Origin: Phallusia mammillata
Lineage: Eukaryota
DNA length: 64,000 bases
Direction: 5' to 3'
Assembly (NCBI GenBank): GCA_965637545.1
Contig: OZ281500.1
Coordinates: forward strand, 2,108,001-2,172,000
Part shown: one piece after another, positions 1 to 26,040 of the stretch
Numbering within the stretch: the first letter of the stretch is position 1
Layout: each line of letters starts with the position of its first letter
Made by a program: the position numbers and the translations under genes
Notes under the pieces: generated by a model
Database searches by the model: none
Told to the model about the DNA's origin: nothing
Seen by the model: only the letters and a program-made list of their open reading frames with translations

Positions 1-2273
1 GGGTAATAACACACTACCCAACACAATCGTTTTAATAACACCACACAGGGTGATAGCAGACGGGAAACTGGCACAAACACAGTGCTAGAACCCTAATTAA
101 AACTTCAGTTTAGAAGTGTGAAATATAAAGTTCTTGTTTTTGTTGGACTGCTTTTTGAACGTTAGCAGAAATGTATTATATTTTATATTTGCTGTTGTAG
201 TTTGAAGTCCACATGCACAAACTACCTAAAGGTTCGAAATCCGAAACCAACGCTGTCCTTTGTGAAAGGTTATGTTAACACTACCCGGTCATTGTACCAC
301 AAGCTCATGGCGTGCCCACCTTCAATAAACCACAGTGTTTGGTTAGTGGTCGGCTCGTGTTACAGTTTGCCTGCTTGCTGATTAGGGAATGGGGCCCAGA
401 AAATTTAGAAGTGCAGAAAATCTACTTAATATTTTGCCGATTTATAAACAAATTCTTAGCAATCAATTGACTTGACAAATGTTCTATTAGTATCTCTCAA
501 AGTGTTGCAGAAATTTTTCAATAATGTCGTAGTATCTCAAATGTCGCAACTCAGCAGATCGGTTGCTATGGTCACGGAACGAAGAAAATGCCTTCACGAT
601 TGCGTAACTCAACCTTTTCAGGAGTCCAAAGACCGATTTCAATCATGCAGATGCGGCCATTTTGTGCATGAAACACTAATTACGGCTACCAGGCTGTGAA
701 CCGTTGACGCCAGTTGTTGACAGGGCGTGACTTGGTCGGTAACGCCCACAACGCTGTCAGCCAATCAGAAACAGGAGAAGTTGTAGCTTCACAGTTGATC
801 ACTTACATTCAACTGGACATTGATTTACTGCTCGCAGAAAAAAAGCAGGACGCACGAAATGATACGTCTGCTGTTCACACAACGGTTTCTCATAAAAATA
901 TTTCAATCTACGAGGGTAACTAGGTCAGTGGCGCAGAGCATTTTATCTGTAAGTAAGCGCACCACATTTCCCTATATTAACCAACAGTTCCATTGAGAGA
1001 AAAAAACCAACAAGATATTTTAAATGAGTTCAGACATCCAAAGTTCTCAGACTTGGTAAACAATTAGACCAAAGGTGAAAAAAATCGTTTGTGTTTATTG
1101 CTTTTAAAAACATAAATTTACTTTTGCACGACAAATTTTTCGCTGCTGTCAATTTTCAAGTACGGACTTAAAAACGTTTGCATTTTGTTACCTGTCATTA
1201 AATAAAATAACTCTTTACCTTACAGGTTCTTTACCCAACAGGCTGCTACCATAAAAGTTGATTGTTCTCTGCGTTTGCTTTCGCATTAAATTCGTTTGAC
1301 ATGAAATAGTTTTGTAAAAACTAACCTGTCATGGAGTTTATGTGTGGTGAATATTCATTTTATTGAAGACGTTTAAAGGCGGATTGTCAGCATCCAGTTG
1401 CATGTGTTAAAGCTGGTTTTAAGTTATGCGTTCAGAGTGTGGGTTTTTGTTGCAAAAATCGTGACAAAATACTTAACTGGAAACAGAATTGTATTCCAGG
1501 CCTGGTTTTTCATGCCAGAATTATAACAGGCTTGATTCGGGCTTGCCAGTTCAAACAAATATGATTTGAACTGGGGTTGGAGCTTGTGCTTTCGCTTTCG
1601 GCCACAGCAGCTTTACCAAACCTGCAGGATTTGTAAATTTGTAGTGTATAGTGTATAAAACGAACAACATGATGCAGCATGAATAACCCCCCAAAAAGAA
1701 CATCAGACATCCGCACTAACCAACTTTCGTGCAGCTCCAGTGCAATCTATATGGGTCGCGTGTCGCAAGCTTGGCCTCACACCCGGCACTCGTTATTCAC
1801 GTGATGGTTTCACACCGACAAGTTGGGACTGATTCTTGGCCAAATGTTTGCCCACCACGCCCTCGGTTGATGCCACCCAGTGTTAGACTTGTCTTTTTCA
1901 TGCTTTGGCCACGCGGTTTCTGCGTGAGGAGGTGCGGCGTGGGTGTGTACCCGCCCTGTACCCGCCCCTTTTCTGCGTGAGGGGACATTTCTGGCGTTTT
2001 TGTCGGAATAATGAAACACTACCCTACACAATTGTTTTTATAACCCCACACAAGGTGATAACAAGGAAAAAACCTACTATTAGGTTCCGGGTAAGATATA
2101 AGCATATAAAATTCAATTGAACTAGAATAGAACTTAGTTTTAGATGTAAAATTTTTAAAAACTTACATCCTAAACCAACCCCTCTTCAACTGCTAAATAA
2201 ATAATTCAGCTTTTTGCGCCACCTGTGGAAAATTAGCTAAATGTAGGTCTCCAGTGAATGGTGTTAGTTAGTA

Positions 2274-2660
2274 TAGGCCTACCATACGTCCTCTTTTTGG
2301 AGGACATATCCTCCTTTTTGATAAAAACCAAGTTGTCCTCCGAGGACAAGAAAAGGTGCCCAAATGTCCTCCTTTTCAACGAATTTCTGATTTACCAACC
2401 CGTAAGTGACAATTATGCCTTTGAAAACATTAATCTTCAGCTTATTTTTTGAGAATACAGGTGGATTTTACATTTTTTTGAAAAAAATCAAGGTTATTTT
2501 TGTGTGGTGATGTGATTAACGTTAAACTTTATCCGAATTATAATTCAATACCTTTTAATTCTTTTTATTTTTTTATTTTTTTTTTGGGGGGGGGGGTATT
2601 TTTCATGTTCGCTTCAACAATTTGTCCTCCTTTTTTGGGGATGGAAATATGGTAGCCCTA
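2274..2660. mobile_element. hAT-type MITE (TAGG(G/C)CTACCATA termini) embedded in the array unit
   Basis: Left TAGGCCTACCATA, right TATGGTAGCCCTA; flanks AGTTAGTA/TGTTAGTA (7/8 TSD). Full copy also at 9600-9980, internally deleted copy at 6680-6785, right end only at ~12025-12054. Confidence 0.8.
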
Positions 2661-3437
2661 TGTTAGTAGCTCTATACCGATAACAGGCGGGAAACTGGCA
2701 CAAACACAGTGCTAGAACGTTAATTAAACTTTAGGTTAGAAGTGTGAAACATAAAGTTCTTGTTTTTGTTGGACTGCTTTTTGAACGTCAGCAGAAATGT
2801 ATTATTTTTTTACATTTGCCTTTGCAGTTAAAAACCAACACTGTCTTTTGTGAAAGGTTATGTTAACACCACCGTGTCATTGTACCACAAGCTCATGGCG
2901 TGCCCACCTTCAGAAACCACAGTGTTTGGTTAGTGGTCGACTCGTGCTGCAGTCAGCTTCCTTGCTGATAGGGGGCGGAGGTCAAACAAAGGTTTGCTGT
3001 GCCGAAAGTCGTTCGCTATATAGTGACCTCAATTGTCAACACAAAAATCTCATTCCCGTACAATTGGCGATTGCAGTTTTATTAATTTAGAAGTGCAGAA
3101 AATCAACTTAATATTTTGCCGATTTATAAACAAATTCTTAGCAATCAATTGACTTGACAAATGTTCTATTAGTATCTCTCAAAGTGTTGCAGAAATTTTT
3201 CAATAATGTCGTAGTATCTCAAATGTCGCAACTCTGATCGGTTGCTATGGTCACGGAACGAAGAAAATGCCTTCACGATTGCGTAACTCAACCTTTTCAG
3301 GAGTCCAAAGACCGATTTCAAATCATGCAGATGCGGCCATTTTGTGCATGAAACACTAATTACGGCTACCAGGCTGTGAACCGTTGACGCCAGTTGTTGA
3401 CAGGGCGTGACTTGGTCGGTAACGCCCACAACGCTGT

Positions 3438-4120
3438 TGCGGGGGCGAGGGTGCGCGTCCGTGCTCGCGTGTTATTGTTTGCTTGAAAGCTTGATACTTC
3501 TTCTGCTTCTCGTGGCTCGTATCGGTCGTCTGCAGTAGCGAGTAAGTTCATTATTACGATTCTCAACGCTTGCTGCATAGAGCCGACATGATCCACAAAA
3601 GATCAATTTAGTTCTTGTCTTTTATTCTGGTTACGCAACACACATCAAGTCTCATTTATCTCAAGGAAAGGATACGATGGAAAGAGAGAGATCAACGATA
3701 AAACATTGTCTTTTAAACTGATACTCGTTTTTCGTGCGATCATTCCAGAACAGTGCCTTCTTTTACTCACATCAGTTATTAGTTTGTTTTAAGTTAAACG
3801 CTTGCAAAGATTTGCAGCACTGCAATGGATTGCACAACTATTTCAAAACACCCGGTTTACGCAACAGCCTGTCTTATGGTCAGGCTGTTGGAAAATATCA
3901 GGAAGACGGGAACATGTAACAACGACACTGAATATGTGTTTCAACAGTTACTGAATCGTGAGAACACATGGAACAGTAAAGTTACACCGCTCGATACCAT
4001 ATGTCGCAAAAGCAGCATATACATTCCATGGAACGAAAAGTCATGGTTGCAAAGTTAAAATTTTTCATTACTTAATGCTTAGCCAAACCAAAGTGCCAAA
4101 ATGATGGCTTAAAAGCTACA
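3438..4120 (-). mobile_element. Probable solo LTR (Gypsy-like termini) inserted in array unit 2
   Basis: Absent from the other units. TG...CA ends (minus strand TGTAGC...CCCGCA), 4-bp TSD CTGT at 3434-3437 and 4121-4124, AATAAA on the minus strand near 3620. A partial second copy lies at 4726-5169. Confidence 0.65.
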
Positions 4121-4525
4121 CTGTCAACCAATCAGAAACAGGAGAAGTTGCAGCTTCACAGTTGATCACTTACATTCAACTGGACATTGATTTACTGCTC
4201 GCAGAAAAAAAGCAGGACGCACGAAATGATACGTACGTCTGCTGTTCACACAACGGTTTCTCATAAAAATATTTCAATCTACGAGGGTAACTAGGTCAGT
4301 GGCGCAGAGCATTTTATCTGTAAGTAAGCGCACCACATTTCCCTATATTAACCAACAGTTCCATTGAGAGAAAAAAACCAACAAGATATTTTAAATGAGT
4401 TCAGACATCCAAAGTTCTCAGACTTGGTAAACAATTAGACCAAAGGTGAAAAAAATCGTTTGTGTTTATTGCTTTTAAAAACATAAATTTACTTTTGCAC
4501 GACAAATTTTTCGCTGCTGTCAATT

Positions 4526-4725
4526 NNNNNNNNNNNNNNNNNNNNNNNNNNNNNNNNNNNNNNNNNNNNNNNNNNNNNNNNNNNNNNNNNNNNNNNNNNN
4601 NNNNNNNNNNNNNNNNNNNNNNNNNNNNNNNNNNNNNNNNNNNNNNNNNNNNNNNNNNNNNNNNNNNNNNNNNNNNNNNNNNNNNNNNNNNNNNNNNNNN
4701 NNNNNNNNNNNNNNNNNNNNNNNNN
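4526..4725. other. Assembly gap (200 N)
   Basis: Run of 200 N; flanks 3687-4525 and 4726-5574 are near-identical. Confidence 0.99.
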
Positions 4726-7700
4726 AGAGATCAACGATAAAACATTGTCTTTTAAACTGATACTCGTTTTTCGTGCGATCATTCCAGAACAGTGCCTTCT
4801 TTTACTCACATCAGTTATTAGTTTGTTTTAAGTTAAACGCTTGCAAAGATTTGCAGCACTGCAATGGATTGCACAACTATTTCAAAACACCCGGTTTACG
4901 CAACAGCCTGTCTTATGGTCAGGCTGTTGGAAAATATCAGGAAGACGGGAACATGTAACAACGACACTGAATATGTGTTTCAACAGTTACTGAATCGTGA
5001 GAACACATGGAACAGTAAAGTTACACCGCTCGATACCATATGTCGCAAAAGCAGCATATACATTCCATGGAACGAAAAGTCATGGTTGCAAAGTTAAAAT
5101 TTTTCATTACTTAATGCTTAGCCAAACCAAAGTGCCAAAATGATGGCTTAAAAGCACGTGACCGCTACACTGTCAACCAATCAGAAACAGGAGAAGTTGC
5201 AGCTTCACAGTTGATCACTTACATTCAACTGGACATTGATTTACTGCTCGCAGAAAAAAAGCAGGACGCACGAAATGATACGTACGTCTGCTGTTCACAC
5301 AACGGTTTCTCATAAAAATATTTCAATCTACGAGGGTAACTAGGTCAGTGGCGCAGAGCATTTTATCTGTAAGTAAGCGCACCACATTTCCCTATATTAA
5401 CCAACAGTTCCATTGAGAGAAAAAAACCAACAAGATATTTTAAATGAGTTCAGACATCCAAAGTTCTCAGACTTGGTAAACAATTAGACCAAAGGTGAAA
5501 AAAATCGTTTGTGTTTATTGCTTTTAAAAACATAAATTTACTTTTGCACGACAAATTTTTCGCTGCTGTCAATTTTCAAGTACGGACTTAAAAACGTTCG
5601 CATTTTGTTACCTGTCATTAAATAAAATAACTCTTTACCTTACAGGTTCTTTACCCAACAGGCTGCTACCATAAAAGTTGATTGTTCTCTGCGTTTGCTT
5701 TCGCATTAAATTCGTTTGACATGAAATAGTTTTGTAAAAACTAACCTGTCATGGAGTTTATGTGTGGTGAATATATTTTATTGAAGACGTTTAAAGGCGG
5801 ATTGTCAGCATCCAGTTGCATGTGTTAAAGCTGGTTTTAAGTTATGCGTTCAGAGTGTGGGTTTTTGTTGCAAAAATCGTGACAAAATACTTAACTGGAA
5901 ACAGAATTGTATTCCAGGCCTGGTTTTTCAGGCCAAATTAAAACAGGCTTGATTCGGGCTTGCCAGTTCAAACAAATATGATTTGAACTGGGGTTGAAGC
6001 TTGTGCTTTCGCTTTCGGCCACAGCAGCTTTACCAAACCTGCAGGATTTGTAAATTTGTAGTGTATAGTGTATAAAACGAACAACATGATGCAGCATGAA
6101 TAACCCCCCCAAAAAGAACATCAGACATCCGCACTAAGCAACTTTCTTGCAGCTCCAGTGCAATCTATATGGGTCGCGTGTCGCAAGCTTGGCCTCACAC
6201 CCGGCACTCGTTATTCACGTGATGGTTTCACACCGACAAGTTGGGACTGATTCTTGGCCAAATGTTTGCCCACCACGCCCTCGGTTGATGCCACCCAGTG
6301 TTAGACTTGTCTTTTTCATGCTTTGACCACGCGGTTTCTGCGTGAGGGGGTGCGGCGTGGGTGTGTACCCGCCCCTTTTCTGGGTGATGGGACATTTTTG
6401 CGTTTCTTTGTCGGGATAATGAAACAGTACCCTACACAATTGTTTTTATAACCCCACACACGGTGATAACAAGGAAAAATCTACTATTAGGGTCGCGGTA
6501 AAATATAAGCATATAAAATTCAATTGAACTAGAATAGAACTTAGTTTTAGATGTAAAATTTTAAAAACTTACATCCTAAACCAACCCCTCTTCAACTGCT
6601 AAATAAATAATTCAGCTTTTTGTGACACCTGTGGAAAATTAGCTAAATGTAGGTCTCCAGTGAATGGTGTTAGTTAGTATAGGCCTACCATACGTCCTCT
6701 TTTTGGAGGACATATCCTCAGGTATTTTTCATGTTTGCTTCAACAATTTGTCCTCCTTTTGGGGGATGGAAATATGGGAGCCCTGTGTTAGTAGCTCCAC
6801 CGAAACCAGGCGGGAAACTGGCACAAACACAGTGCTAGAACGTTAATTAAAACGTTGGTTTAGAAGTGTGAAACATAAAGTTCTTGTTTTTGTTGGACTG
6901 TTTTTTGAACGTTAACAGAAATGTCATATTTTTTTACATTTGCTTTTGTAGTTAAAAACCAACACTGTCCTTTGTGAAAGGTTATGTTAATACTAACCGG
7001 TCATTGTACCACAAGCTCATGGCGTGCCCACCTTCAATAAACCACAGTGTTTGGTTACTGGTCGATTCGTGCTGCAGTCAGCTTTCTTGCTAATTGAGGA
7101 ATGAGATCAAGAAAAGGTTTGCTGTGCCCAAAGTCGTTAGCAATATAGTGACCTAATCGTCAAACACAAAAATCTCATTCACTTACAATTGGCAATTGTA
7201 GTTTTATTAATTTAGAAGTACAGAAAATCAACTTAATATTTTGCCGATTTATAAACAAATTCTTAGCAATCAATTGACTTGACAAATGTTCTATTAGTAT
7301 CTCTCAAAGTGTTGCAGATATTTTTTAATAAAGTCGTAGTATCTCAAATGTCGCAACTCTGATCGGTTGCTATGGTCACGGAACGAAGAAAATGCCTTCA
7401 CGATTGCGTAACTCAACCTTTTCAGGAGTCCAGAGACCGATTTCAATCATGCAGATGCGGCCATTTTGCGCATGAAACACTAATTACGGCTACCAGGCTG
7501 TGAACCGTTGACGCCAGTTGTTGACAGGGCGTGACTTCGTCGGTAACGCCCACAACGCTGTCAACCAATCAGAAACAGGAGAAGTTGTAGCTTCACAGTT
7601 GATGCACGAAATGATACGTCTGCTGTTCACGCAACGGTTTCTCGTAAAAATATTTCAATATACGAGGGTGACTAGGTCAGTGGCGCAGAGCATTTTATCT

Positions 7701-8917
7701 GTAAGTAAGTGCACCACATTTCCCTATATTAACCAACAGTTCCAATTAGAGAAAAAAACCAACAAGATATTTTTAAATCAGTTGAGACATCCAAAGTTTT
7801 CAGACTTTTAGACCAAACGTGAAAAAAAATCGTTTGTGTTCATTGCTTTTAAAAACATAAATTTACTTTTGCACGACAAATTTTTCGCTGCTGTCAATTT
7901 TCAAGTACGGACTTAAAAACGTTTGCATTTTGTTACCTGTCATTAAATAAAATAACTCTTTACCTTACAGGTTCTTTACCCAACAGGCTGCTGCCATAAA
8001 AGTTGATTGTTCTCTGCGTTTACTTTCGCATTAAATTCGTTTGACATGAAATAGTTTCGTAAAAACTAACCTGTCATGGAGTTTATGTGTGGTGAATATA
8101 TTTTATTGAAGACGTTTAAAGGCGGATTGTCAGCATCCAGTGTTGCATGTGTTAAAGCTGGTTTTGAGTTATGCGTTCAGAGTGTGGGTTTTTGTTGCAA
8201 AAATCGTGACAAAATACTTGACTGGAAACAGAATCCCGGGCCTGGCTTTTCAGGCCTGAATTCAAACAGGCATGATTCGGGCTTGCCAGTTTAAACAAAT
8301 ATGATTTGAACCGGGGTTGAAGCTTGTGCTTTCGCTTTCAGCCACAGCAGCTTTACCAAAACTGCAGGATTTGTAAACTTGTAGTGCATAGTGTATAAAA
8401 CGAACAACATGATAAAGCATGAATAACCCCCAAAAGAAGAGCATCAGACATCCGCACTAAGCAACTTTCTTGCAGCTCCAGTGCAATCTATATGGGTAGT
8501 GTGTCGCAAGCTTGGCCTCACACCCGGCACTCGTTATTCACGTGATGGTTCCACACCGACAAGTTGGGACTGATTCTTGGCCAAATGTTTGCCCACCACG
8601 CCCTCGGTTGATGCCACCCAGTGTTAGACTTGTCTTTTTCATGCTTTTGCCACGCGTTTTCTGCGTGAGGGGGTGCGGCGTGGGTGTGTACCCGCCCTGT
8701 ACCCGCCCCTTTTCTGCGTGAGGGGAACATTTCTGCGGTGTTTCTGTGTCGGGATAATGAAACAGTACCCTACACAATTGTTTTTATAACCCCACACACG
8801 GTGAGAAGGAAAAATCTACTATTAGGGTCCGGGTAAGATATAAGCATATAAAATTCAATTGAACTAGAATAGAACTTAGTTTTAGATGTAAAATTTTTAA
8901 AAACTTACATCCTAAAC

Positions 8918-9493
8918 CAGGGGTAGGGAACCTTTTTGTTCATAAAGGCCACCAAACATTTTATCGACAGTCGTTTAGGCCGCACAGACTATTTCCCAGG
9001 CCAAGGACAGTGATGTTCAAACTTTTTAGATCACATTAGTGTCGTTTTGCTATCTCCTCGTAGAGCTGTAGGACATACGGTCCAATCTAATTAAAATTCC
9101 TTACTACATTTTCAACTTTAACTGAAACATTCAGGATATATTTAACCTGGAAATTCGCTTGTTTACAAATATCAATGATCTAAGAGCAGCTTGTGACATC
9201 ACAGACGTGTTTAAGACATTCCATTATGCGCAAACAATTGTTCTATTGCAACACAAGTAAGATTGTGGAACCTTGGGCTTTTGGTAGTCCTATCGCTTAT
9301 CGCTTTGTGTACCACACCAGAACTAATCAAGTAGAAATGTGAAATAAAGGTGAAAAAATACGTTTCTGTCCATTATTCAGCACCTGGTGCCGTAGTAATA
9401 TCAACATCATCAAATGTATTTTGACTTCGAAGGCCGCACTTAGAGCCCTAAAAGGCCGCATGCGGCCTTTATGCCGCAGGTTCCCCAGCCCTG
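8918..9493. mobile_element. hAT MITE (CAGGG termini) inserted only in array unit 3
   Basis: TIRs CAGGGTAGGGAACCT / AGGTTCCCCAGCCCTG; perfect 8-bp TSD TCCTAAAC; empty site in units 1 and 2. Confidence 0.92.
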
Positions 9494-9599
9494 TCCTAAA
9501 CCAACCCCTCTTCAACTGCTAAATAAATAATTCAGCTTTTTGCGCCACCTGTGGAAAATTAGCTAAATGTAGGTCTCCAGTGAATGGTGTTAGTTAGTA

Positions 9600-9980
9600 T
9601 AGGCCTACCATACGTCCTCTTTTTGGAGGACATATCCTCCTTTTTGATAAAAACCAAGTTGTCCTCCGAGGACAAGAAAAAGTGCCCAAATGTCCTCCTT
9701 TTCAACGAATTTCTGATTTACCAACCCGTAAATGACAATTATGCCTTTGAAAACATTAATCTTCAGCTTATTTTTTGAGAATACAGGTGGATTTTACATT
9801 TTTTTGAAAAAAAACAAGGTTATTTTTGTGTGGTGATGTGATTAACGTTAAACTTTATCCGAATTATTATTCAATACCTTTTAATTCTTTATTTTGTTTT
9901 ATTCTTTGGGAGGGGCGTGTTTTTCATGTTCGCTTTAACAATTTGTCCTCCTTTTGGGGGATAGAAATATGGTAGCCCTA
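9600..9980. mobile_element. hAT-type MITE, full copy of 2274-2660
   Basis: Same termini and near-identical internal sequence. Confidence 0.8.
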
Positions 9981-12900
9981 TGTTAGTAGCTCTACCGATA
10001 ACAGGCGGGAAACTGGCACAAACACAGTGCTAGAACGTTAATTAAAACTTCAGTTTGGAAGTGTGAAATATAAAGTTCTTGTTTTTGTTGGGCTGATTTT
10101 TGAACGTGAGCAGAAATGTCATATTTTTTATATTTGCCTCTGCAGTTATAAACCAACACTGTCTTTTGTGAAAGGTTATGCTAACACCGCCCGGTCATTG
10201 TACCACAAGCTCATGGCGTGCCCACCTTTAGTAAACCACCATGTTTGTTTAGTGGCCGGCTCGTGCTCCAGTAAGATTGCTTGCTGATAGGGGGCGGGGG
10301 TCAGAAAAGGTATGCTGTGCCGAAAGTTGTTAGCTATAACGACCTCATGGTCAAACACAAAAATCTCATTCCCTTATAATTGGCAATTGTAATTTTAATA
10401 ATTTGGTGGTGCTGAAAATCAATGTGTTGTTTTGCCGATTTTTCAACATGGCAAATGTTATATTAGTATATTTGTGTACAAATATATTATAATATTGTCG
10501 TAGTATCTCAAATATCGCAACTCAGCAGATCGGTTGCTATGGTCACGCAACGAAGAAACTGCCTTCACGATTGCGTAACTCAACCTTTTCAGGAGTCCAA
10601 AGACCGATTTCAATCATGCAGATGCGGCCATTTTGCGCATGAAACACTAATTACAGCTACCAGGCAGTGAACCGTTGACGCCGGTTGTTGACAGGGCGTG
10701 ACTGCGTCGGTAACGCCCACAACGCTGTCAACCAATCAGAAACAGGAGAAGTTGTAGCTTCACAGTTGATCAATTACATTCAACTGGACATTGATTTGCT
10801 GCTCGCAAAAAAAACAGGACGCACGAAATGATACGTCTACTGTTCACACAACGGTTTCTCATAAAAATATTTCAATCTACGAAGGTGACTAGGTCAGTGG
10901 CGCAGAGCATTTTATCTGTAAGTAAGTGCACCACATTTCCCTATATTAACCAACAGTTCCAATTAGAGAAAAAAACCAACAAGATATTTTTAAATCAGTT
11001 GAGACATCCAAAGTTTTCAGACTTTTAGACCAAACGTGAAAAAAAATCGTTTGTGTTCATTGCTTTTAAAAACATAAATTTACTTTTGCACGACAAATTT
11101 TTCGCTGCTGTCAATTTTCAAGTACGGACTTAAAAACGTTTGCATTTTGTTACCTGTCATTAAATAAAATAACTCTTTACCTTACAGGTTCTTTACCCAA
11201 CAGGCTGCTGCCATAAAAGTTGATTGTTCTCTGCGTTTACTTTCGCATTAAATTCGTTTGACATGAAATAGTTTCGTAAAAACTAACCTGTCATGGAGTT
11301 TATGTGTGGTGAATATATTTTATTGAAGACGTTTAAAGGCGGATTGTCAGCATCCAGTTGCATGTGTTAAAGCTGGTTTTAAGTTATGCGTTCAGAGTGT
11401 GGGTTTTTGTTGCAAAAATCGTGACAAAATCCTTAACTGGAAACAGAATTGTATTCCAAGCCTGGTTTTTCAGGCCTGAATTATGAAACAGGCTTGATTT
11501 GGGCTTGCCAGTTTAAACAAATATGATTTGAACCGGGGATGGAGCTTGTGCTTTCGCTTTCGGCCACAGCAGCTTTACCAAACCTGCAGGATTTGTAAAT
11601 TTGTAGTGTATAGTGTATAAAACGAACAACATGATGCAGCATGAATAACCCCCCCAAAAAGAACATCAGACATCCGCACTAAGCAACTTTCTTGCAGCTC
11701 CAGTGCAATCTATATGGGTCGCGTGTCGCAAGCTTGGCCTCACACCCGGCACTCGTTATTCACGTGATGGTTCCACACCGACAAGTTGGGGCTGATTCTT
11801 GGCCAAATGTTTGCCCACCACGCCCTCGGTTGATGCCACCCAGTGTTAGACTTGTATTTTTCATGCTTTGGCCACGCGGTTTCTGCGTGAGGAGGTGCGG
11901 CGTGGGTGTGTACCCGCCCCTTTTCTGGGTGATGGGACATTTTTGCGTTTCTTTGTCGGGATAATGAAACACTACCCTACACAATTGTTTTTATAATCCC
12001 ACACAATATAAATCCCACACAAGGCTTTTTGAGGATGGAAATATGCTAGCCCTATGTTAGTAGCTCTACCGATAACAGGCGGAAAACTGGCACAAACACA
12101 GTGCTAGAACGTTAATTAAAACTTTAGTTTAGAGGTGTGAAATACAAGGTTCTTGTTTTTGTTGGACTGCTTTTTGAACGTTAGCAGAAATGTCATATTT
12201 TTTTACATTTGCCTTTGTAGTTAAAAACCAACACTGTCCTTTGTGAAAGGTTATGTTAACACCACCCGGTCATTGTACCACAAGCTCACTTACATTTAAC
12301 TGGACATTGATTTACTACTTGCAGAAAAAAACGGGCAAAGAAAATTGATACGTCTCCTGTTTACACAACGGTTTCTTGTAAAAATGTTTCAATCTATTAG
12401 ATCGAAGGCCCAGAGCATCCACATTTCACATATTAACCATCAGTTCCACTGAGACCAAACAAAAAAAATACACTTCTTAATACACAGGTCAAAAAAGCAC
12501 TTTATAAAACCAGTGCCGAAAAAAATGCATAGAAAAAGAGTTCTTTGTTTAAACGCACGACCGCAAGTTTATATATTTCAGTGCACACATGCACGGCGTC
12601 ATAAACTTGTTCTCATCTCATAAAACCAAACATTAAAAACTTGCTGTTTAGCAAACATCGATGTACAATAACGTAAACGGTTTAAACCTATGTCATAAAT
12701 CTGAACCTATTTAAAATATAGACCAACAACTCGTAAACCGTTGTTCAAACAGTGGTTATAACTGCCTGCCTAATAATTGTGTCGAAACAATACAGCCTGT
12801 CAGTATTATGTAATGGGTTATAAAATCCATCGTCAAACTAGTTATGATACTGGGGTCGTTATTATCATGTTTGCGCTATATTCCTGTCATAAATGCACAA

Positions 12901-13176
12901 ATATTTTCTGACATCCCATGTTCGCTGGCTTGGTAAACAAATCGATATATAAGCTAAAGGTGTTTGGACAATAGAAATTTGTGTTTTATTCCATTTTTTA
13001 TCCAGTTAACATCGTTTGTGTTTTTTACTTTGTTTGACATGAAATAGTTTTGTAAAAACAAATCTCCCATAGAGCTTATGTGTGGTAAATCTATTTTATT
13101 GAAAACGTTTTAACGCGGATTATCTGCATTCAGTGTTGCATGTGCTAAAGCTTTCAAGTTTGAGAACACTATATAC

Positions 13177-13495
13177 CAGGGGCGGGCGACCTGCGGCCCG
13201 CGGGCCAAATGGAACCCTTCATTAAAGGTTGTGCGGCCCGCAGATACGCTTGGATTCCAAATGTACTGGCAAACGAGTCCAACTATTATACATTTTTGAG
13301 TATATTAATAAGCCCGGTGCTATTTTTCTGCGACCTGGCAATATATGGCGAGAATCAAATGAAAACTTTGCCTGTGGTTAAGCATATTTGGTAAGCAACT
13401 AAGTAAAATCACCTTGTGTTATACACAGGTGCGGCCCGCGATCTAATTTTGACAATTGTAATTGGCCCCACAGTAAAAAAGGTTGCCCACCCCTG
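13177..13495. mobile_element. hAT (Charlie/Buster-like) MITE
   Basis: CAGGGG...CCCCTG termini, subterminal CGGCCCGCG motifs, TSD CTATATAC/CTATACAC. Confidence 0.85.
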
Positions 13496-13698
13496 CTATA
13501 CACGGACTTAAAGAGTATTTAATGAACATAACTGCCAAAGAACTTTTGTACATACAACCTGCACTGATGATGACAACAGTGATTGTTGAAACGCCTGCAT
13601 AATGTATTCTATATACATAAGTTCTTTGGCAGTTATGTTTATGATTAAACTGTTTTATGTTATGGTGGCAAAATCCGTTCCAAAATACATGCTGTAAA

Positions 13699-14015
13699 TA
13701 GAGCTGTAACTCGGTCCAGGCCTTGCGGCCTTGAATTTGGAAAACACCGGCTTGATTTGGGCATGACTTTAAAATTTTTTATCACATTTTTACCAACTTT
13801 TAGGCCTGATTAGGGCTTTACCAGTTGGAAAAATAGGGTTTGAACCGGGTTTTGGGCATGTACTTCGCGATCGGGCACAGCTTAACCAAACTCGCAGGAT
13901 TTGTACACTCGTAGTATACGGTGTATAAAACCAACTTGAATACACCCCAAAATCGAAGAAACACAACTGGGAGAATTGTCAAGAATATGCACTGACCGAT
14001 ATTCTTGCAGCTCCA
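13699..14015. mobile_element. Possible old TIR element; left-truncated homologs occur in each array unit (e.g. ~1495-1740)
   Basis: Ends TAGAGCTGTAA / TTGCAGCTCCA are imperfect inverted repeats; no convincing TSD. Confidence 0.35.
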
Positions 14016-15514
14016 GTGCAATCTATATGGGTCGCATGTTGCCAGCTTGGCCTCACATTCAGTTAACGGTCGTAAACTATACGAGCTTACTTTGGAAACA
14101 GTAAAAATATTTGCGCAAGATAAAAGTTATAATCCTTGCGACGAACGCAGAAACTGGCAATGGCTTTTTAGAAAGTTCAGTTCACTTACAATATTTGTAT
14201 CTCGATTTAGTTTTTACGCGGCGATTTAGTTTATAAATGTTTTAAATATGTTGTAACTATTGACTTTGTTAACAACAGCTTAAGACGATAAAAGCACTCT
14301 TGGCAATAGTTTTTTTGTGCACACTTACAAAATACACTCTGATAATGAAAGTAATAAACCTTCTTTATTAGTGATTTCCTGTTTAATTTTACCTTGTAAA
14401 TGGTAATTGCCCCTAAGCAGTTTTGTGATTATGCACTAAGACTTTAACAAATTTTTGTGGTTCTTTGTTTCTTTCGTGGAACACATTAACTTAACTTGTG
14501 TTACGTTTGCAATACACGAATAAAAGTCGGTTTATGTTTGCAATACAATAAACTTGTATAATGCCTATTTTATCGTCAGTAAAGCCAAGTGCTATTAATA
14601 AGTTTTACGGCAATAATTCTTGTTTTGCATTGCAAACAGCGGATTTACAATGCTGAATCAGACTCTCAAATTCATGATCGAGGACATACTATGTTTCATG
14701 CCATAAGTGTTCCGCCCGTTTCGACATAGTTTACTAGGCTGTCTCGAGCTTGTCAAATTTTGCGGTTCTGATCATAATATTACATTAACAACGTGTGCAT
14801 AACATTTAGGAATGGTGTTAATCACGTACGGCTGGGTTGTCTCAAACGGTGCCAAGCGAAAGTACGAAAACACACGACTAAGTAAATATTATGAAGTGCC
14901 AAACCATGTTTTTGAAGCAAGTCATCACCCCCCTGGTGGATTTTGTTTGCTTTGTCAAATACACAGATGTATTTTGCATTAAAAACGCCGGCTCATCGAT
15001 CTTGTGCATATATTAGCGCAAGAGTGTATTGGGTTTGAGTTGGAACGAAGCGAAATTTTGTAACATTAGGGAAAACAGTCGGAAAGGTTAAAATAAGTCA
15101 AGACGTGCATTCTTGCTTTGTATAGCATCACATATTGTTGAGGTTTTTCCCGGCTACAATTAAGCTGCTTTAAGTGGGGAAGTTACCCTTCCTGTGGAAA
15201 ATTGGCAAAGCGGTATTGAGCCTAGAATTAGTATGTTTTATGTTGCCCCGTCAACTAGCATAATTATTAAGACATATCGTTTAGTCTTACCCAGACAAAA
15301 TATCAGTAGAATTTAATTGCGGACTGGCAACGTCGTTTTATGTACACTTCTGTGGTCATCCTTTCTGCCTACTTTGCACTTTCAAGATAAGTGCACAAAG
15401 CCTTTAGAAGAGTCGAAGTCCATAGGCAGACAATGCTCAAACATTCTATTAGAAGTTGAAGTCCATCACGTATTATATAGGTTTGTGGTTTTCTGCCGCG
15501 CTATTTTGCCACTC

Positions 15515-15732
15515 AGCACTCGTTATTCACGTGATGGTTCCACACCGACAATCTGGAGCTAATTCTTGTTTGGCCAAATGTTTGCCCACCACAGCTTGGG
15601 TTTATGCAACCAGTGTTAGACTTTTCTTTTCCATGCTTTGGTCACGCGTTTTCTGCGTGAAGGGGGCGTGGTGTAGGTGTGTACCCGTCCTGGATTTTTG
15701 CCTCTTTCGTCATTTGCTTAACGAGTATAAAA
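15515..15732 (+). promoter_or_regulatory. Putative proximal promoter of SLC34 gene 1
   Basis: CACGTG at 15528-15533, CACGCG at 15643, GC-rich boxes, TATAAAA at 15726-15732. The CACGCG-to-TATA spacing (83 bp) is mirrored upstream of gene 2 (85 bp). Confidence 0.6.
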
Positions 15733-16084
15733 TGCTCGTCAAAACCCATGTAATCGCCAGTTCAGGAAAGATTTAGGCAAAGGATTATTTAAAATTGTCA
15801 TTTAGGTTGTTTTTCTTCCTGCAAGTAAGAGACATCCTCGTATTAAAACAAAAACGGGGTTAATTTTCTCAAGTCAAATTCAGTCAGAAACATTCCGCGT
15901 AAATTTTATTCAACTTATGCATCGTATGGCAGGCAGTGAAAGGCCCAACACTTTATACATATAGTTTAACGATTAAAATATATTTTAGGCCCTACAGCAA
16001 AAAAACTCTTAATATTTTTCTTAAAATCATAGAATTATAAATTAAAAATAAAAATTCGCTGCGTAAATTTGCAAAACAACAGAA

Positions 16085-19000
16085 ATGGCTGATAGCGGGA
16101 AAAAGGATTTGGAAATGTCAATCTCCGACAGCAGTAAGTTATGCGCTTTTGAGTTCGATCATAAAAACTATCAAGTCATATAAATGTATTTGCAAATACG
16201 TAGGTTTGGATGAAATACCTTTGGACAAAGATGATGGTCCTGAAAACGACGATGCTTGGGCAATAAAATGGGACAAAGATGGTAAATGTTAAAATTTTGA
16301 ATTTTAACATTTAAGTTTTCTCTTTAAGTTAGCTGCAAATATTCCTTCTAAAGCAACGCAAAACTGGATAGAAAAATTTGCCAACATGTATATTTAATTT
16401 TCTGCAAGTTCGTTGTAATACAACAGCGGTATAAATCTATTTCGAACGAAATTCTTTAAGTATGAATCAGTGGTCAGCAACCGCCGAGCCGAGGCCCGGT
16501 CCTCGAGGAGTTCGTTAACGGGCCGTATACTTTTAAAGGTAGCCGGTCCGTGTTAAAAATGCACTTTTATAAAACGGTCCGCAGTGCATAGAAGCTTGCC
16601 GACCCGTGAAGTAAACGATCGGATATAAAGTGGCGCGGCCAGTACCGGACGGTGGAGATTTGGTACCGGGCAGCACAGAAACAGTAGGTAGCTTATTGTC
16701 CGTTGTACTTAAGGCCCCTAGGGGGAATAATCTATCACCCCTAGGTGGAAGTACCGTATTGCAACAACATAAACCCAGTGACTTACTAAATCAACGTGAT
16801 TGTGACCGATGAGTTACAAAACTGAAACTTTCGTCCTTTTTAGGCGGCTGCAATAATTTGCCTGGTTTAAACCGGTGCGTAGTGCGTAAAGGTTTGCCAC
16901 CGATGAAAATGCATTTTTGTATCACAGATGATTACGAGAAATGGAGCGACAAAACAACAAAAGAAAAAGTAAAAGCTGTTGCAATATCTTTAGTGAAGAT
17001 CACTGTGGTTCTGGGATGCTTATACGTCTTTATATGTTCCATAAGCATGCTTGGAGACTCGTTTCAAATTCTAGGTATGACTTCTATAATCTTAACTTAT
17101 TATTTCATAGAAATTTTATCCGTTTTTTTTCAACAGCTGGAAAGACGGCGGGTGAAATCTTCTCAAACGATTCGTTCCTTAGCAACCCGATCACTGGTCT
17201 CATCATCGGTATCCTGGTAACGGTTCTGGTTCAGAGCTCATCCACTTCCACATCCATTGTCATCACCATGGTTGCATCGGGAAGTAAGTGACATAGTGTA
17301 TAGGCCAGAACTAACTTAGGTCATCAAAAGTTGGTCAACGTTCATTACAAATGCAAATCATAATTTTGTAAATAATCAAATCACAAGAAACAAAAAATGT
17401 ACCTTGTAAATTCAAAGATTATAATGTAATGACCCATAGAGTCAACACTTTATTCACTAATTCGTAATTTTGCCATAACTTTAACCTGAGTTATATTCAA
17501 TTCAGTTTTGTCGGTGGAAAACGCGGTCTACATTATAATGGGCACCAATATCGGAACTTCAGTCACAAACACGATCGTCTCGTTGTCGCAATCCATGGAC
17601 AAACAAGAGTTTAGGAGGTAATTTTCAGTGAGTAATGTAAAGGGAATCCCGGACAAAATTTCTTGTCAACAGTTTGGCCGTTGTAACGACCTTTGTAAAC
17701 ACCAATGGCGTCCAAAAAGTCATATTTCCTTTATGATTGTGTGTGCGCATCTAATACGTACTAAAACTTCATCGTAGCTAAATCCAACTTTCGGGTCTAC
17801 GTAACTACGACTTTAATATGCATTTACGAATTTGCATCTGAAAGGCAGAGCAATCAACTACATTACATCCATTTTTAGTGGACCATGTTTTGTCTGCCTT
17901 AGTCATTGCGACTGACTTGCTGTGATTTAATTTTAAAGTTCTTTCTCCTTAACCGCTGTTTACTGCAGCCACCGCATTTTATTCGCAGCCGTGTCCTGTG
18001 TTTTTCGTGACGCTTAGCAACAATGCGTCACTGTGGTAAACGAGTTTATGTGCACGTAAACACATTTTTAATACATTACTTAATCCCGTATTTTTGTCCA
18101 AATAACCCTAAACCTTAACAGCGTAAAATGTTAAAAACAAGTGTTTCGAAACAGGGCATTTGCTGGTGCCACCGTGCACGACATCTTCAATCTGCTCTCA
18201 GTGCTTATACTCCTGCCTCTGGAAGTGGTCTCAGGTTACTTAGAAGTGATGACAAAAGCAATTATCACTTCTTTTCACATTCAAGGTGGCGCCGATGCAC
18301 CAGACATGCTCAAGGTACTAAGACTTAAGCTGTGAAATATGTGTGCAAGCAGTGGTGGCATTTAGCCGGTTCGCACCGGTTCTATAGAACCGTCTCACGA
18401 AATTTTACGAGTTTAGCGAACCGGTTAGCATTACTGGTTACTGTCAATGGACTTTTTGTAACAGAACCGGCTGAAAAATATGACTTTTGTGATATAACGG
18501 ACTGACAATAAAAATTGAATCCCACCACTGTGTGCAAGTAATGTGTGAACTGAATACTTACACGCGGCTGTCTTGTGCTCAGGTCATAACTGATCCATTG
18601 GTGAAGTCTATTGTGCAAATAAACAAGACTGTTATCACACTTGTAGCACAAGAGGTCCCCCTTGAGCCAGAATCGAGCATGATCAATGTAAGTGACAACG
18701 TAAAGTGACAAACCCTTCAAATATTAATTATGTTTTTCGTGGTTTTAGATTTGGTGCGAGTCAAGACCTGGTTACATTAACGTTACTGAATCTTACAACC
18801 AAACTATTGGCGTTACGAATTCTACAGCAGCTTACACAACCTCTGTGATGGAAATGACGACAATATACGAGCAAGAAGTTGTTGTTGGTGTAAGAAAATG
18901 TAGGTTTTTGCCTTTCCAACATACAATAAATAATAAAATATGCGCAAAATTAAGCTACAGTTTCGACCAATATACAGTGCACACTGTTTCGACCAATAAG

Positions 19001-21293
19001 ATCTCATCAGTGCAGACGGCTACACTAGCCACTATGGCCTATGTCTTATCACTAGTTACACTGATGAGACCTAATAGGTCGAACTGTTTGCAGCTTTTAC
19101 ATTTATTGGCATGATGGCGTTATATTTCTTTACGGGTTTGTCTACTGATACTAACGTTATGCTGGAGCAAAAGTCTTACATCTGTTTTTTTATTTAGGCA
19201 AGTCACCGGAAGATTTTCTTTTTGCTAACACTGGCCTCTCCGATGTCGAGGCGGGTGTGATCCTTTTGATAGTGTCTCTTATCATCCTTTGCACATGTCT
19301 TATTCTCATGGTAAAAGTTCTCAACTCTATGATGCAAGGCACTGTATCACGGGTTATTAAAAAGGTCATCAACACCAACTTTAGATACCCCTTCGGCTGG
19401 GTAACAGGTAAATTTGTAGTGTTTCTCGACATTAAAAATTATAATTATTTTTTTAATACTTCGGAGTGGGCGGCATCAGGGTTTGATAAACCAGGCATAA
19501 TCTATTGTTTGAGCTAGTTTTGTCACATATAATCCCAGAAAATGTGAATGCAAAAGTACAAAATATGCTGTTTGCTGCCGTGCTAATTGAAAAATCTACT
19601 AACACCATTCCCAACGTCAGCCGCACATTTAGCTAAATTTTGAAGTGCGCAAAGAGCTCGAATACCTATTCAAACGGGATTTCTCCAAAAATGCAGACAG
19701 TTAGTGTTGTTACTATAACCACTAAATGGTTGTTACTAGGGATGGGCCAAAACTGCAAGTGTTCTGTTTGGTCGAGCACCGAGCATCACTCTTTAATGCT
19801 CGGTGCTCGGCTGAGCACGCTCGGTGCATTATGACGTCACAAAAAAATCCCCTTTCTACGTTTTTGCTCTACAAGGCCTCTCACGTCACCGGCGGTGTTT
19901 TATTAAGCTGTACATGCCCTTTAAGTACGCGTTTTCCACCATCTAGTGCATTTGAAAAATCATTCGTTTTAGTTTATAGACTCCCTTTAGAACACTAGTT
20001 ACATATGTTAGCAGCGCACGAATATGCGAATTTAACGCTCGGGTCAGTTTGTGCAACTGCTCGGCCGAGCACCGAGCATTAAAAACAGCGATGCTCGGTA
20101 CCGAGTACTCGGGTTCTGGCTCGGTTCGGCCCATCCCTAGTTGTTACTATAACCACTAAATGGCGATGACTGCAGAGATTTTGGGCAATAAAATGCATTT
20201 ACGTTGTCAACGCTCTCTCTAGCACAGTGGTTATCAACCTTCCATTGACCGTGGCCCCCTAAAAGTAACTTTCGGGTCCGGTGGTTGCCTTTTATATTAC
20301 CCTATAAAACCTGTTGCCCCGACACACACTCAATTCTGCGCATTATAAAAGAAAAAAAGACTCATTGACTTTCGGTGAATGATTTTCTCCGAAATAAAGA
20401 TCGTGGCCCCTTGTGGGGGAGGGGGCAAGGGCGCTGGTTAAGAACCCCTGCTCTAGCACTTGTTTTTGACCAAACTTCACCAACAGTAATTAACTTAGCT
20501 ACTGCTTAACCTTGATTTATTGTAACCACTGATGTTCGCAGGTTATCTTGCAATGGTCGTTGGTGCTGGAATCACTTTCGTAGTGCAAAGCAGTTCGGTT
20601 TTCACCTCGACAATGACTCCTCTCGTTGGGATCGGAGTAATCAGTCTGAAGCGAATGTACCCTCTTACTTTGGGTTCCAACATCGGCACGACCACCACAA
20701 GTATATTAGCTGCTCTCGCCAGCGACCCGTCCAGGCTTGAGGACTCTTTACAAATTTCCCTGGTTCATTTGTTCTTCAACATAACCGGTATCCTTATCTG
20801 GTATCCGATTCCCTTTATGCGCATCCCCATCAGAGGAGCAAAGTTCCTTGGCAACACGACGGCTGAGTACCGATGGTTTGCTGTACTTTATCTCATCAGC
20901 GTCTTTTTCCTCATCCCAATTATCCTCCTGGCACTCTCGATTGCTGATCTCTGGGCTCTTCTCTCTGTGGTGATCTTGGTAGCTGTGATCGTGATCTTCA
21001 TCGTAGCAACCAATCTTCTTCAGACGCACAAACCACAGTGGCTTCCCGCATCAATGAGGACGTGGGAGTTTCTTCCCCTTCCGATGCGATCCCTTCAACC
21101 TTACGATCGCATCATGACCAAGTATCTTCTCTGCAAATGCTGCTGCAAGGGAGCAGTTGTGGATGCAGAAGATAAGGATGTGGAAAGTATTGAATCTTCT
21201 TCTGCTCAATCATCACCTCCTCCTTACTCAATAGATGGAGCAGATAACGAAGCGTTTACGCCTGAGGATAAAACTCACGTGACTGCTTTTTAG
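16085..21293 (+). CDS. SLC34A: Type II Na+/phosphate cotransporter (NaPi-II), paralog 1, ~636 aa, 10 exons
   Basis: Exons 16085-16133, 16204-16281, 16928-17074, 17137-17283, 17506-17617, 18155-18314, 18583-18687, 18749-18899, 19198-19407, 20542-21293; all GT-AG, frame consistent (1911 nt). Two QSSS repeats, [25 protein letters not shown]-terminal CKCCC and TAF. Confidence 0.96.
16468..16608. mobile_element. Short hAT-like MITE in SLC34-1 intron 2
   Basis: Imperfect TIRs CAGTGGTCAGCAA / TTGCCGACCCGTG; TSD not evident. Confidence 0.5.
18350..18530. mobile_element. hAT MITE (CAGTGGTGG family) in SLC34-1 intron 6
   Basis: TIRs CAGTGGTGG/CCACCACTG, perfect TSD TGTGCAAG; sister copy at 53715-53902. 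Confidence 0.9.
19737..20139. mobile_element. hAT MITE (TAGGGATGGG termini) in SLC34-1 intron 9
   Basis: TIRs TAGGGATGGGCC/GGCCCATCCCTA, perfect TSD GTTGTTAC, subterminal CTCGG/CCGAG repeats. Confidence 0.92.
20225..20450. mobile_element. hAT MITE in SLC34-1 intron 9
   Basis: CAGTGGTTATCAACC / GGTTAAGAACCCCTG termini, perfect TSD CTCTAGCA. Confidence 0.9.
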
Positions 21294-22295: not shown

Positions 22296-22654
22296 CTGTT
22301 CCCCCACGGCTCAGTTTGCAACCAGAAAATTGCGAAAGTTGCTGAAATTATCAACTGGCAGTGAAGGGAATTTGTAGTAAGAATATTTTTTAAAATGTTC
22401 ACAATTAATATTTTGTGTAATATGTCATATGTGGTGAAGTATATGGTTCGATATGCTTAATGCCGAAATGAAGCGGAAATCTAGTCAAGTTTAGACAAGT
22501 TTCTGTAATGTTGTTTTGCAAACATACGAACGATATAAAATATGTTTTGTTTTTGAATAATTTTTTGTTTTGCTTTAATCAGAACCAACCCGGCATTACT
22601 AACTTAAACCTTAACCTAAAATTTACACTAATTTCTCAAAAACAAACAACAATA

Positions 22655-25600: not shown

Positions 25601-26040
25601 AGTTCCTTGGCAACACGACGGCTGAGTACCGATGGTTTGCTGTACTTTATCTCATCAGCGTCTTTTTCGTCATCCCAATTATCCTCCTGGCACTCTCGAT
25701 TGCTGATCTCTGGGCTCTTCTTTCGGTCTTGATCCTTGTGGCTGTGATCGTGATCTTCATCGTAGCAACCAATCTTCTTCAGACGCACAAACCACAGTGG
25801 CTTCCCGCATCCATGAGGACGTGGGAGTTTCTTCCTCTTCCTTTGCGATCTCTCAAGCCGTACGATCGCATCATGACTAAGTATCTTCTCTGCAAATGCT
25901 GCTGCAAGGACGCCGTTGCCGACGATGACGTAGAAAGTGTTGAATCGTCAGTTTCTTCTTCACCGCCTTCTTACACCACGGCGGCGGCGGAAAACATGGC
26001 GTTTGATACCAGCGAGTTTACCAACACAACAGCGCTTTGA
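22655..26040 (+). CDS. SLC34A: Type II Na+/phosphate cotransporter (NaPi-II), paralog 2, ~633 aa, 10 exons
   Basis: Exons 22655-22703, 22768-22848, 23097-23243, 23394-23540, 23721-23832, 23905-24064, 24134-24238, 24519-24669, 25021-25230, 25301-26040 (1902 nt). Same exon phases and motifs as paralog 1; ends TTAL. Confidence 0.96.
24705..24933. mobile_element. hAT-like MITE in SLC34-2 intron 8
   Basis: CAGGGGATCTCAACCT / AGTTTGAGAAGCCCTG termini, GCGACCC subterminal motifs; TSD not matched. Confidence 0.65.

What the first reader, a model, noticed from the sequence alone, without database searches (positions are those of the whole stretch)
1..15732. Tandem amplification of the SLC34 upstream regulatory region without the gene
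Seen: the ~2.6 kb unit is colinear with the DNA upstream of SLC34 gene 1, including a ~175-bp block that best matches 15515-15690. That block carries CACGTG (1798, 6216, 8539, 11761, 15528), CACGCG and several GCGTG/GC boxes. Homology stops just before the gene's TATA (15726), so each unit holds the upstream elements but no TATA or exon. Inference: at least five copies of a phosphate-transporter cis-regulatory module form an enhancer array that could raise or tune expression by copy number rather than gene dosage. Seawater Pi is scarce, so a selective rationale is plausible but untested.
Basis: partly seen in the sequence, partly recalled or inferred. Interest (0 to 1): 0.78.

Follow-up and report, generated by a model that had tools for sequence, protein, structure and literature searches.

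The report
Repeated upstream DNA before SLC34 gene
The stretch of non-coding DNA just upstream of a sea-squirt phosphate-transporter gene has been copied head to tail at least four extra times without the gene; the copies are real and found only here, but nothing in the sequence yet shows that they boost the gene.

Summary
Window 52-12288 is a head-to-tail array of four non-coding units (2.07-3.2 kb). A fifth, older copy (12025-15692) ends 34 bp before the TATA of SLC34 gene 1. The unit core and its ~180-bp GC-rich block occur nowhere else in the 240-Mb genome: the block has exactly five copies, all here. All five CACGTG positions are exact.

Corrections:
- The assembly gap sits between two copies of the same 839 bp (zero substitutions, one 10-bp indel). 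This is probably an unmerged contig overlap, so it adds no unit.
- Unit length varies because of later transposon insertions and deletions.
- A TATAA pentamer lies about 75 bp after each array block.

There are no exon remnants and no protein or RNA family matches in the units.

The enhancer-array reading remains untested. CACGTG is not enriched. The block varies no less than its neighbours among units. The identity pattern fits gene conversion.

A second, unrelated non-coding array lies upstream of another SLC34 gene, and a third SLC34 cluster is a whole-gene array.

This is a new member of a known kind, a non-coding tandem duplication next to a gene. This scan had not noted it before.

The parts
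52..2631 (+). Array unit A (2580 bp), the leftmost unit. The array's left edge lies at about 34-52.
   Evidence: Self-BLAST. No similarity to the 20 kb upstream of the window.
2632..4525 (+). Array unit B, left part, up to the gap.
3437..4117 (.). A 680-bp insertion found only in unit B. Its first 250 bp (3437-3686) belong to a dispersed element with copies 93-100% identical elsewhere in the genome.
   Evidence: flanked by an imperfect short duplication.
4526..4725 (.). Assembly gap (200 N). It was not filled or looked up.
4726..5574 (+). Redundant copy of 3687-4525: zero substitutions and one 10-bp indel at 5154-5163. Probably an unmerged contig overlap.
5575..6755 (+). Array unit B, right part. 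With the redundancy removed, unit B is about 3075-3085 bp.
6756..9950 (+). Array unit D (3195 bp).
8918..9493 (.). A 576-bp MITE inserted in unit D after the duplication. It has terminal inverted repeats starting CAGGG and an 8-bp target-site duplication TCCTAAAC (8910-8917 and 9494-9501); unit A keeps the empty site. The features are hAT-like. Dozens of copies exist genome-wide, up to 97% identical.
9951..12024 (+). Array unit E (2074 bp). Most of its junction transposon is deleted.
2077..2660 (.). Old dispersed element (about 80-83% identical to genomic copies) sitting exactly at the unit-to-unit junction. The same element lies at 6484-6784 (with an internal deletion) and at 8819-8917 plus 9494-9980. 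A 45-bp tail remains at 12025-12070.
12025..15692 (+). Proximal, older copy P. It is colinear with unit positions 1-1958 in patches of 72-93% identity.
13169..13650 (.). Dispersed transposon inserted in P (87-89% identical to many genomic copies).
14058..15509 (+). A 1452-bp segment of P that is unique in the genome and absent from the units. It was probably deleted in the unit lineage.
1780..1958 (+). GC-rich block, copy in unit A (GC 56% against 39% in the flanks). Holds CACGTG at 1798, CACGCG and GCGTG boxes.
6198..6374 (+). GC-rich block, copy in unit B (CACGTG at 6216).
8521..8699 (+). GC-rich block, copy in unit D (CACGTG at 8539).
11743..11919 (+). GC-rich block, copy in unit E (CACGTG at 11761).
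15510..15692 (+). GC-rich block, native promoter-proximal copy (CACGTG 15528, CACGCG 15643, a GC/GT box about 15661-15670). It is 84-85% identical to the array copies.
15726..15732 (+). TATAAAA of SLC34 gene 1. A putative non-coding first exon follows. This is inferred from the sequence, with no RNA evidence.
16085..21293 (+). SLC34 gene 1, coding part from ATG at 16085. It has about 10 exons, with Na_Pi_cotrans domain matches at 17169-17282 and 20541-20801. Exons were searched one by one and were not joined.
22644..26037 (+). SLC34 gene 2, a tandem paralogue. Its upstream DNA has no similarity to the unit.

Best explanation
This is a locus-specific tandem segmental duplication of the 5' flanking DNA of SLC34 gene 1.

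Origin. A segment running from about 3.7 kb upstream to 34 bp before the TATA box was duplicated once, long ago. That event left the diverged proximal copy P. It also left a junction holding about 118 bp of array-specific sequence of unknown origin plus a transposon.

Expansion. The distal copy then grew to at least four units by unequal crossing-over. Gene conversion keeps its 1.5-kb core homogeneous, while transposons and deletions accumulate around the junctions.

What the units can and cannot do. They carry the promoter-proximal GC-rich cluster of E-box and GC-box motifs but no core promoter and no exon. They could influence gene 1 only from a distance, 3.8 to 13.7 kb upstream.

Shown and inferred. 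The structure, its restriction to this locus and its history are shown. Any effect on transcription is inferred. My reading is that the array is most likely a neutral or weakly modulating by-product of the recombination-prone SLC34 clusters. I put the chance that it is a selected enhancer array at roughly one in four.
For: - Head-to-tail units with a shared junction element.
- The core and the block are found only here in 240 Mb, and nothing similar lies in the 20 kb upstream.
- P is colinear with the unit, and homology ends 34 bp before the TATA.
- No exon remnants and no Pfam, Rfam or tRNA matches.
- Events after the duplication: a MITE with a clean 8-bp target-site duplication in unit D and an empty site in unit A, a 680-bp insertion in unit B, and junction deletions in the B/D and E/P junctions.
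- Concerted evolution: the core is 96-99.5% identical against 85-94% for the edges. Informative sites mostly group the units as (A,B)(D,E), with conflicting sites as well.
- No sign of constraint specific to the block (p = 0.17), and no CACGTG enrichment.
- Other SLC34 loci on the same chromosome are also tandemly rearranged: an unrelated non-coding array at C7:3.816-3.827 Mb, and a whole-gene array with an 8.5-kb period at 99.8% identity at C7:13.53 Mb.
Against: - No read-level, expression or chromatin evidence could be obtained.
- Between P and the array the block is the best-kept long patch (84% against 72-82% for the others). It is GC-rich (50-56% against 38%). Both are what a functional promoter-proximal module would show.
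- Two independent non-coding arrays lie upstream of SLC34 genes, whereas 90 kb of control DNA holds no kb-scale array. That could reflect selection rather than instability.
- The copy number across the gap is uncertain.
Confidence: 0.6

Rival explanations
1. One reading: the units are working enhancer or promoter-proximal modules. Their copy number raises or tunes SLC34 gene 1 transcription, perhaps in response to phosphate through bHLH-ZIP factors on CACGTG, and the array was kept by selection.
For: - Each unit keeps the GC-rich motif cluster intact, with runs of 23-24 invariant bases across all five copies.
- The block is the best-conserved long patch between P and the array.
- CACGTG is the TFE3-bound phosphate-response element of mammalian NaPi-IIa and the Pho4 site in yeast (PMC6326012).
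- There are precedents for amplified non-coding DNA changing expression (PMC2685452, PMC8328317).
- A second, independent non-coding array lies upstream of another SLC34 gene.
- SLC34 is expanded to about ten or more genes in this genome.
Against: - There is no functional data.
- CACGTG is at chance frequency.
- At 84% identity, invariant runs of 23-24 bases are not unusual (my estimate: about 0.5 expected).
- The block is no more constrained than the rest of the core among the units.
- The identity pattern fits gene conversion.
- No other SLC34 promoter shares the block.
Confidence: 0.25
2. Each unit is a cryptic or alternative promoter. It would make an upstream non-coding RNA, or a variable first exon spliced to the common SLC34 exons, as in the Pcdh and UGT1A gene clusters.
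For: A TATAA pentamer lies about 75 bp after the block in all four units, followed by a GT that could serve as a splice donor.
Against: - The units show no similarity to the gene's TATA, start region or any exon.
- They hold no conserved ORF and no family match.
- The TATAA-to-GT spacing would leave almost no exon.
- TATAA is a frequent chance word in DNA that is 60% A+T.
Confidence: 0.07
3. The array is largely an assembly artefact, made by haplotype copies or repeat mis-assembly placed in tandem.
For: A scaffold gap lies inside the array, and its flanks are the same 839 bp written twice.
Against: - The right part of B, then D, E, P and the gene are contiguous within one gap-free stretch.
- The units differ from each other by 1-14% and carry different private transposon insertions and deletions. 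Two haplotypes cannot produce that.
Confidence: 0.05
4. The unit is an ordinary transposable element or satellite.
For: Pieces inside the units are dispersed elements: 2077-2660, 3437-3686 and 8918-9493.
Against: The 1.5-kb core, the block and the unit's first segment have no copy outside this locus. The unit has no terminal repeats, target-site duplication or coding capacity of its own.
Confidence: 0.03

Closest known systems
Pea-comb allele of chicken SOX5 (3.2-kb non-coding unit amplified from 2 to about 30 copies; PMC2685452)
   Same: A kilobase-scale, GC-rich, non-coding unit with transposon fragments is repeated head to tail next to its presumed target gene. No coding sequence is amplified.
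   Different: The chicken array is intronic, has about 30 copies, and has a proven link to ectopic expression and a phenotype. Here the array is upstream, has four units or more, and no phenotype, expression or polymorphism data exist.
Multi-allelic 12-kb CNV holding an enhancer of cattle GC (PMC8328317)
   Same: The copy number of a non-coding regulatory segment is proposed to scale the expression of the neighbouring gene.
   Different: The cattle case rests on eQTL, functional-genomics and selection-sweep data. None of these is available here.
Tandem promoter or enhancer repeats upstream of fungal CYP51 genes (papers found, e.g. PMC5146965 for the 34/46-bp repeats of Aspergillus fumigatus cyp51A)
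   Same: A promoter-proximal element is duplicated in tandem upstream of the gene it regulates.
   Different: The fungal units are tens to about 126 bp long, lie within the promoter, and were selected by fungicides. Here the units are 2-3 kb long and lie 3.8-13.7 kb away.
Phosphate-response element of mammalian NaPi-IIa (CACGTG bound by TFE3; reviewed in PMC6326012)
   Same: A CACGTG E-box lies in the promoter-proximal region of an SLC34 gene, about 200 bp before the TATA.
   Different: Only the hexamer is shared. It occurs at chance frequency in this window, and neither binding nor phosphate response has been tested.
Ordinary tandem segmental duplications in gene clusters, evolving in concert by unequal crossing-over and gene conversion
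   Same: Direct repeats with a shared junction, mosaic identity, sites that support conflicting groupings, and neighbouring tandem paralogues.
   Different: The duplicated segment stops just short of the core promoter, so no gene or pseudogene copy is made.

Membership tests
Locus-specific tandem segmental duplication | Head-to-tail direct copies with a common junction | tested here: met
   four units plus P, and every junction carries the same old transposon or its remnant.
Locus-specific tandem segmental duplication | Unit sequence absent from the rest of the genome | tested here: met
   the core, the block and the first segment match only C7:2108052-2123690.
Locus-specific tandem segmental duplication | Copy number confirmed by reads that span or cover the array | not testable with these tools
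Transposable element or satellite | Many dispersed copies, or long homogeneous arrays at several loci | tested here: not met
   Only the embedded pieces 2077-2660, 3437-3686 and 8918-9493 are dispersed.
Transposable element or satellite | Terminal repeats with a target-site duplication at the unit ends, or coding capacity | tested here: not met
   The MITE inside unit D has these features, but the unit itself does not.
Regulatory copy-number array (Pea-comb or GC-CNV type) | Amplified segment is non-coding and lies next to a candidate target gene | tested here: met
Regulatory copy-number array (Pea-comb or GC-CNV type) | Segment is an active regulatory element (open chromatin, reporter activity) | not testable with these tools
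   No chromatin or reporter data can be reached. ATAC-seq data for Phallusia embryos exist (bioRxiv 10.1101/371005), if the species lead is right.
Regulatory copy-number array (Pea-comb or GC-CNV type) | Copy number changes the target gene's expression | not testable with these tools
   No RNA reads or population data.
Regulatory copy-number array (Pea-comb or GC-CNV type) | Sequence signature of constraint on the proposed module | tested here: inconclusive
   Among the units, block against the rest of the core gives p = 0.17. Between P and the units, the block is 84% identical against 72-82% for the other patches. Gene conversion confounds both comparisons.
Variable first-exon array (Pcdh or UGT1A type) | Each unit holds a promoter and a first exon related to the gene's own | tested here: not met
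   No similarity past 15692 and no exon matches in 1-16000.
CACGTG phosphate-response element (TFE3 or Pho4 type) | CACGTG core in the promoter-proximal region | tested here: met
   15528 in P, plus one per unit.
CACGTG phosphate-response element (TFE3 or Pho4 type) | Motif more frequent than chance, or shared by paralogous promoters | tested here: not met
   13 found against 11 +/- 3.5 expected. No other SLC34 locus has the block.
CACGTG phosphate-response element (TFE3 or Pho4 type) | Phosphate-dependent transactivation | not testable with these tools
   Needs an experiment.

The most novel reading that the evidence does not exclude
In this sea squirt, SLC34 phosphate-transporter output is raised by amplifying cis-regulatory DNA as well as by gene duplication. 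On this reading, the promoter-proximal module of gene 1 was multiplied into a working, copy-number-variable enhancer array. An independent array arose upstream of a second SLC34 gene, so regulatory dosage would be a recurrent route of adaptation at this gene family.
Probability: 0.2. Interest if true: 0.65.

Novelty: new member of a known kind. Interest (0 to 1): 0.33.

Why it matters
If the units are active, this would be a natural allelic series for asking how enhancer copy number scales transcription, in an animal where reporter electroporation is routine. It would also show a nutrient-transporter family being tuned through both gene dosage and regulatory dosage. If the units are inert, the locus is still a clean example of how unequal crossing-over, gene conversion and transposon insertion shape non-coding DNA beside a tandem gene cluster. 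It also flags a redundant contig join in the assembly.

Tried and rejected
- TRF found nothing because its period limit is 500 bp. Self-BLAST was needed.
- Whole-unit genome searches were swamped by embedded transposons, so I repeated them with TE-free pieces.
- RNA genes: Rfam at gathering threshold and at E = 0.1, and tRNA scans, gave nothing. The one sub-threshold hit to a baculovirus element is chance.
- Coding potential: ten unit ORFs of 66-106 aa had no Pfam match. Gene 1 exons had no translated or nucleotide match in 1-16000.
- Homology through the TATA: the MAFFT alignment suggested TATAAAA aligned with TAATGAAA, but local alignment scored no better than shuffles, so I rejected it.
- Block shared with other SLC34 promoters: none found.
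- Relationship between the two non-coding arrays: none, apart from a shared TE fragment.
- CpG observed/expected in the block (0.71-0.85) equals the background (0.80), so it says nothing about methylation.
- Read evidence: the first sequencing-run run was one base too long.
I used a 90-kb baseline from DNA already in hand instead.
- The big protein searches were not used, because the SLC34 identity rests on Pfam matches and the claim does not depend on them.
- The exons of the spliced gene model were not joined.


Full report
**Where the window lies.** The window is G000:C7:2108001-2172000 of a 240-Mb, 312-contig sea-squirt assembly. Another note of this scan names the species as Phallusia mammillata. 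I did not test that.

**Gap test (done first).** The only N run is 4526-4725.
- The 839 bp to its left (3687-4525) and the 849 bp to its right (4726-5574) are identical apart from a single 10-bp indel at 5154-5163.
- The match runs exactly up to both gap edges.
- Genuine units differ from each other by 1-14%. Zero substitutions therefore means the same DNA is written twice, as a dovetail overlap of two contig ends, or less likely a very recent duplicate.
- Both flanks carry a 680-bp insertion private to unit B, which places them in the same unit.
- I did not fill or look up the N. For unit comparisons I left out 4526-5574.

- Self-BLAST and the repeat finder give direct repeats at E = 0.
- The units are A 52-2631, B 2632-6755 (about 3.08 kb once the redundancy is removed), D 6756-9950 and E 9951-12024.
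- P, 12025-15692, is colinear with unit positions 1-1958, in patches of 72-93% identity.
- The array does not continue upstream. Nothing in the 20 kb before the window resembles it.
- The ~180-bp block (15510-15692) matches one site in each unit at 84-85%. It has exactly five copies in the genome, all at this locus.
- Homology ends at 15692, 34 bp before TATAAAA (15726-15732). Alignment of the next 200 bp scores no better than shuffled sequence.

**What the unit is made of.**
- The core (unit positions about 403-1958), the block and the first segment are found only here. This is therefore not a dispersed element or a satellite.
- Dispersed elements are embedded as passengers:
  - an old one sits exactly at every unit junction (2077-2660 and its counterparts), partly deleted at two junctions;
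  - a 576-bp MITE sits in unit D only (8918-9493). It has CAGGG termini and an 8-bp target-site duplication, unit A keeps the empty site, and other genomic copies are up to 97% identical;
  - a 680-bp insertion sits in unit B only;
  - another transposon sits in P (13169-13650).
- P also holds 1452 bp of unique DNA (14058-15509) that the units lack. It was probably deleted in the unit lineage.
- The units contain no SLC34 exon remnant, no Pfam-matching ORF, and no Rfam family or tRNA.

**The genes.**
- Gene 1 starts at ATG 16085 and has Na_Pi_cotrans matches at 17169-17282 and 20541-20801.
- Gene 2 (22644-26037) is a tandem paralogue whose upstream DNA does not resemble the unit.
- I searched the exons one by one by reference.

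**History.**
- P differs from the units far more (16-28% in the alignable patches) than the units differ from each other. An old first duplication was therefore followed by a more recent expansion of the distal copy.
- Among the units the 1.5-kb core is 96-99.5% identical (A against B: 99%+). The edges beside the junction transposon are only 85-94% identical.
- Informative sites mostly group the units as (A,B)(D,E), but some sites support conflicting groupings.
- A tenfold difference in divergence within one unit pair is too large for selection on scattered binding sites. It is what gene conversion or recent unequal exchange produces.

**Is there sequence evidence for function?** Little.
- Among the units the block varies no less than the rest of the core (7/168 against 90/1278 variable sites, p = 0.17).
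- CACGTG occurs 13 times in the window against 11 +/- 3.5 expected. Five of those are one site copied by descent, and a sixth lies in the gap redundancy.
- CpG content equals the background.
- No other SLC34 locus has the block.
- In favour: the block is GC-rich (50-56% against 38%), and it is the best-kept long patch between P and the units. It also has the layout of a promoter-proximal region, with an E-box about 200 bp and a GC/GT box about 60 bp before the TATA. I read those motif identities from the sequence and from general knowledge.

**Context found along the way.** SLC34 is expanded on this chromosome.
- Between two divergently oriented SLC34 genes at C7:3.81-3.83 Mb lies a second locus-specific non-coding array: about three units, 74-96% identical, at 3,815,824-3,826,921. 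It is unrelated in sequence to this one.
- At C7:13.53-13.59 Mb the whole gene is repeated with an 8.5-kb period at 99.8% identity.
- In 90 kb of neighbouring control DNA I found only short-period minisatellites and no kb-scale array.
- This fits either recombination-prone clusters or repeated selection for more SLC34 output.

**Literature.**
- CACGTG is the TFE3-bound phosphate-response element of mammalian NaPi-IIa and resembles the yeast Pho4 site (PMC6326012).
- Amplified non-coding DNA changes expression at chicken SOX5 (a 3.2-kb unit, about 30 copies; PMC2685452) and at cattle GC (a 12-kb enhancer CNV; PMC8328317).

**Verdict.** The structural reading is supported and the regulatory reading is open.
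- About 0.6: a recombination by-product that is neutral or weakly modulating.
- About 0.25: a working, selected enhancer array.
- The remainder: cryptic promoters, assembly inflation, or a transposable element.

Noticed in passing
L039:5824 to L040:6921 (G000:C7:3815824-3826921): A second locus-specific non-coding direct-repeat array (about three units of 3.4-5 kb, 74-96% identical) lies between two divergently oriented SLC34 genes. It is unrelated in sequence to the window's array.
   Followed up: partly
L043-L047 (G000:C7:13535154-13586000): A whole-gene SLC34 tandem array with an 8.5-kb period. Neighbouring copies are 99.8% identical over 11.3 kb, there are at least five or six copies, and some lack individual exons in the exon-by-exon search.
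   Followed up: partly
window 8918-9493, and L001-L010: A 576-bp MITE family with CAGGG termini and 8-bp target-site duplications (hAT-like). It has dozens of copies, some 93-97% identical, so it was active recently.
   Followed up: partly
window 3437-3686, and L026, L027, L030: A ~247-bp dispersed element with many genomic copies 93-100% identical, which makes it a very young family.
   Followed up: no
window 17133-17292 vs 23390-23549, and 18746-18906 vs 24516-24676: Two exons of SLC34 genes 1 and 2 are 97% identical at the DNA level, while other exons are 80-87% identical and the introns do not align. This suggests exon-scale gene conversion between the paralogues.
   Followed up: no
window 5154-5163: The only difference between the two gap flanks is a 10-bp indel, and it contains a CACGTG. 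It may be a haplotype difference that stopped the two contigs from being merged.
   Followed up: no
window 50567-50881, and L031:7125-8417: Short-period (about 159 bp) minisatellites at 90-93% identity. These were the only local direct repeats in the control DNA.
   Followed up: no
window 18347-18531 vs 53712-53903, and L038:5178-5327: A short element with an open frame occurs in an intron of SLC34 gene 1, again at 53.7 kb in the window, and again near the second SLC34 cluster. It is probably a transposon fragment.
   Followed up: no
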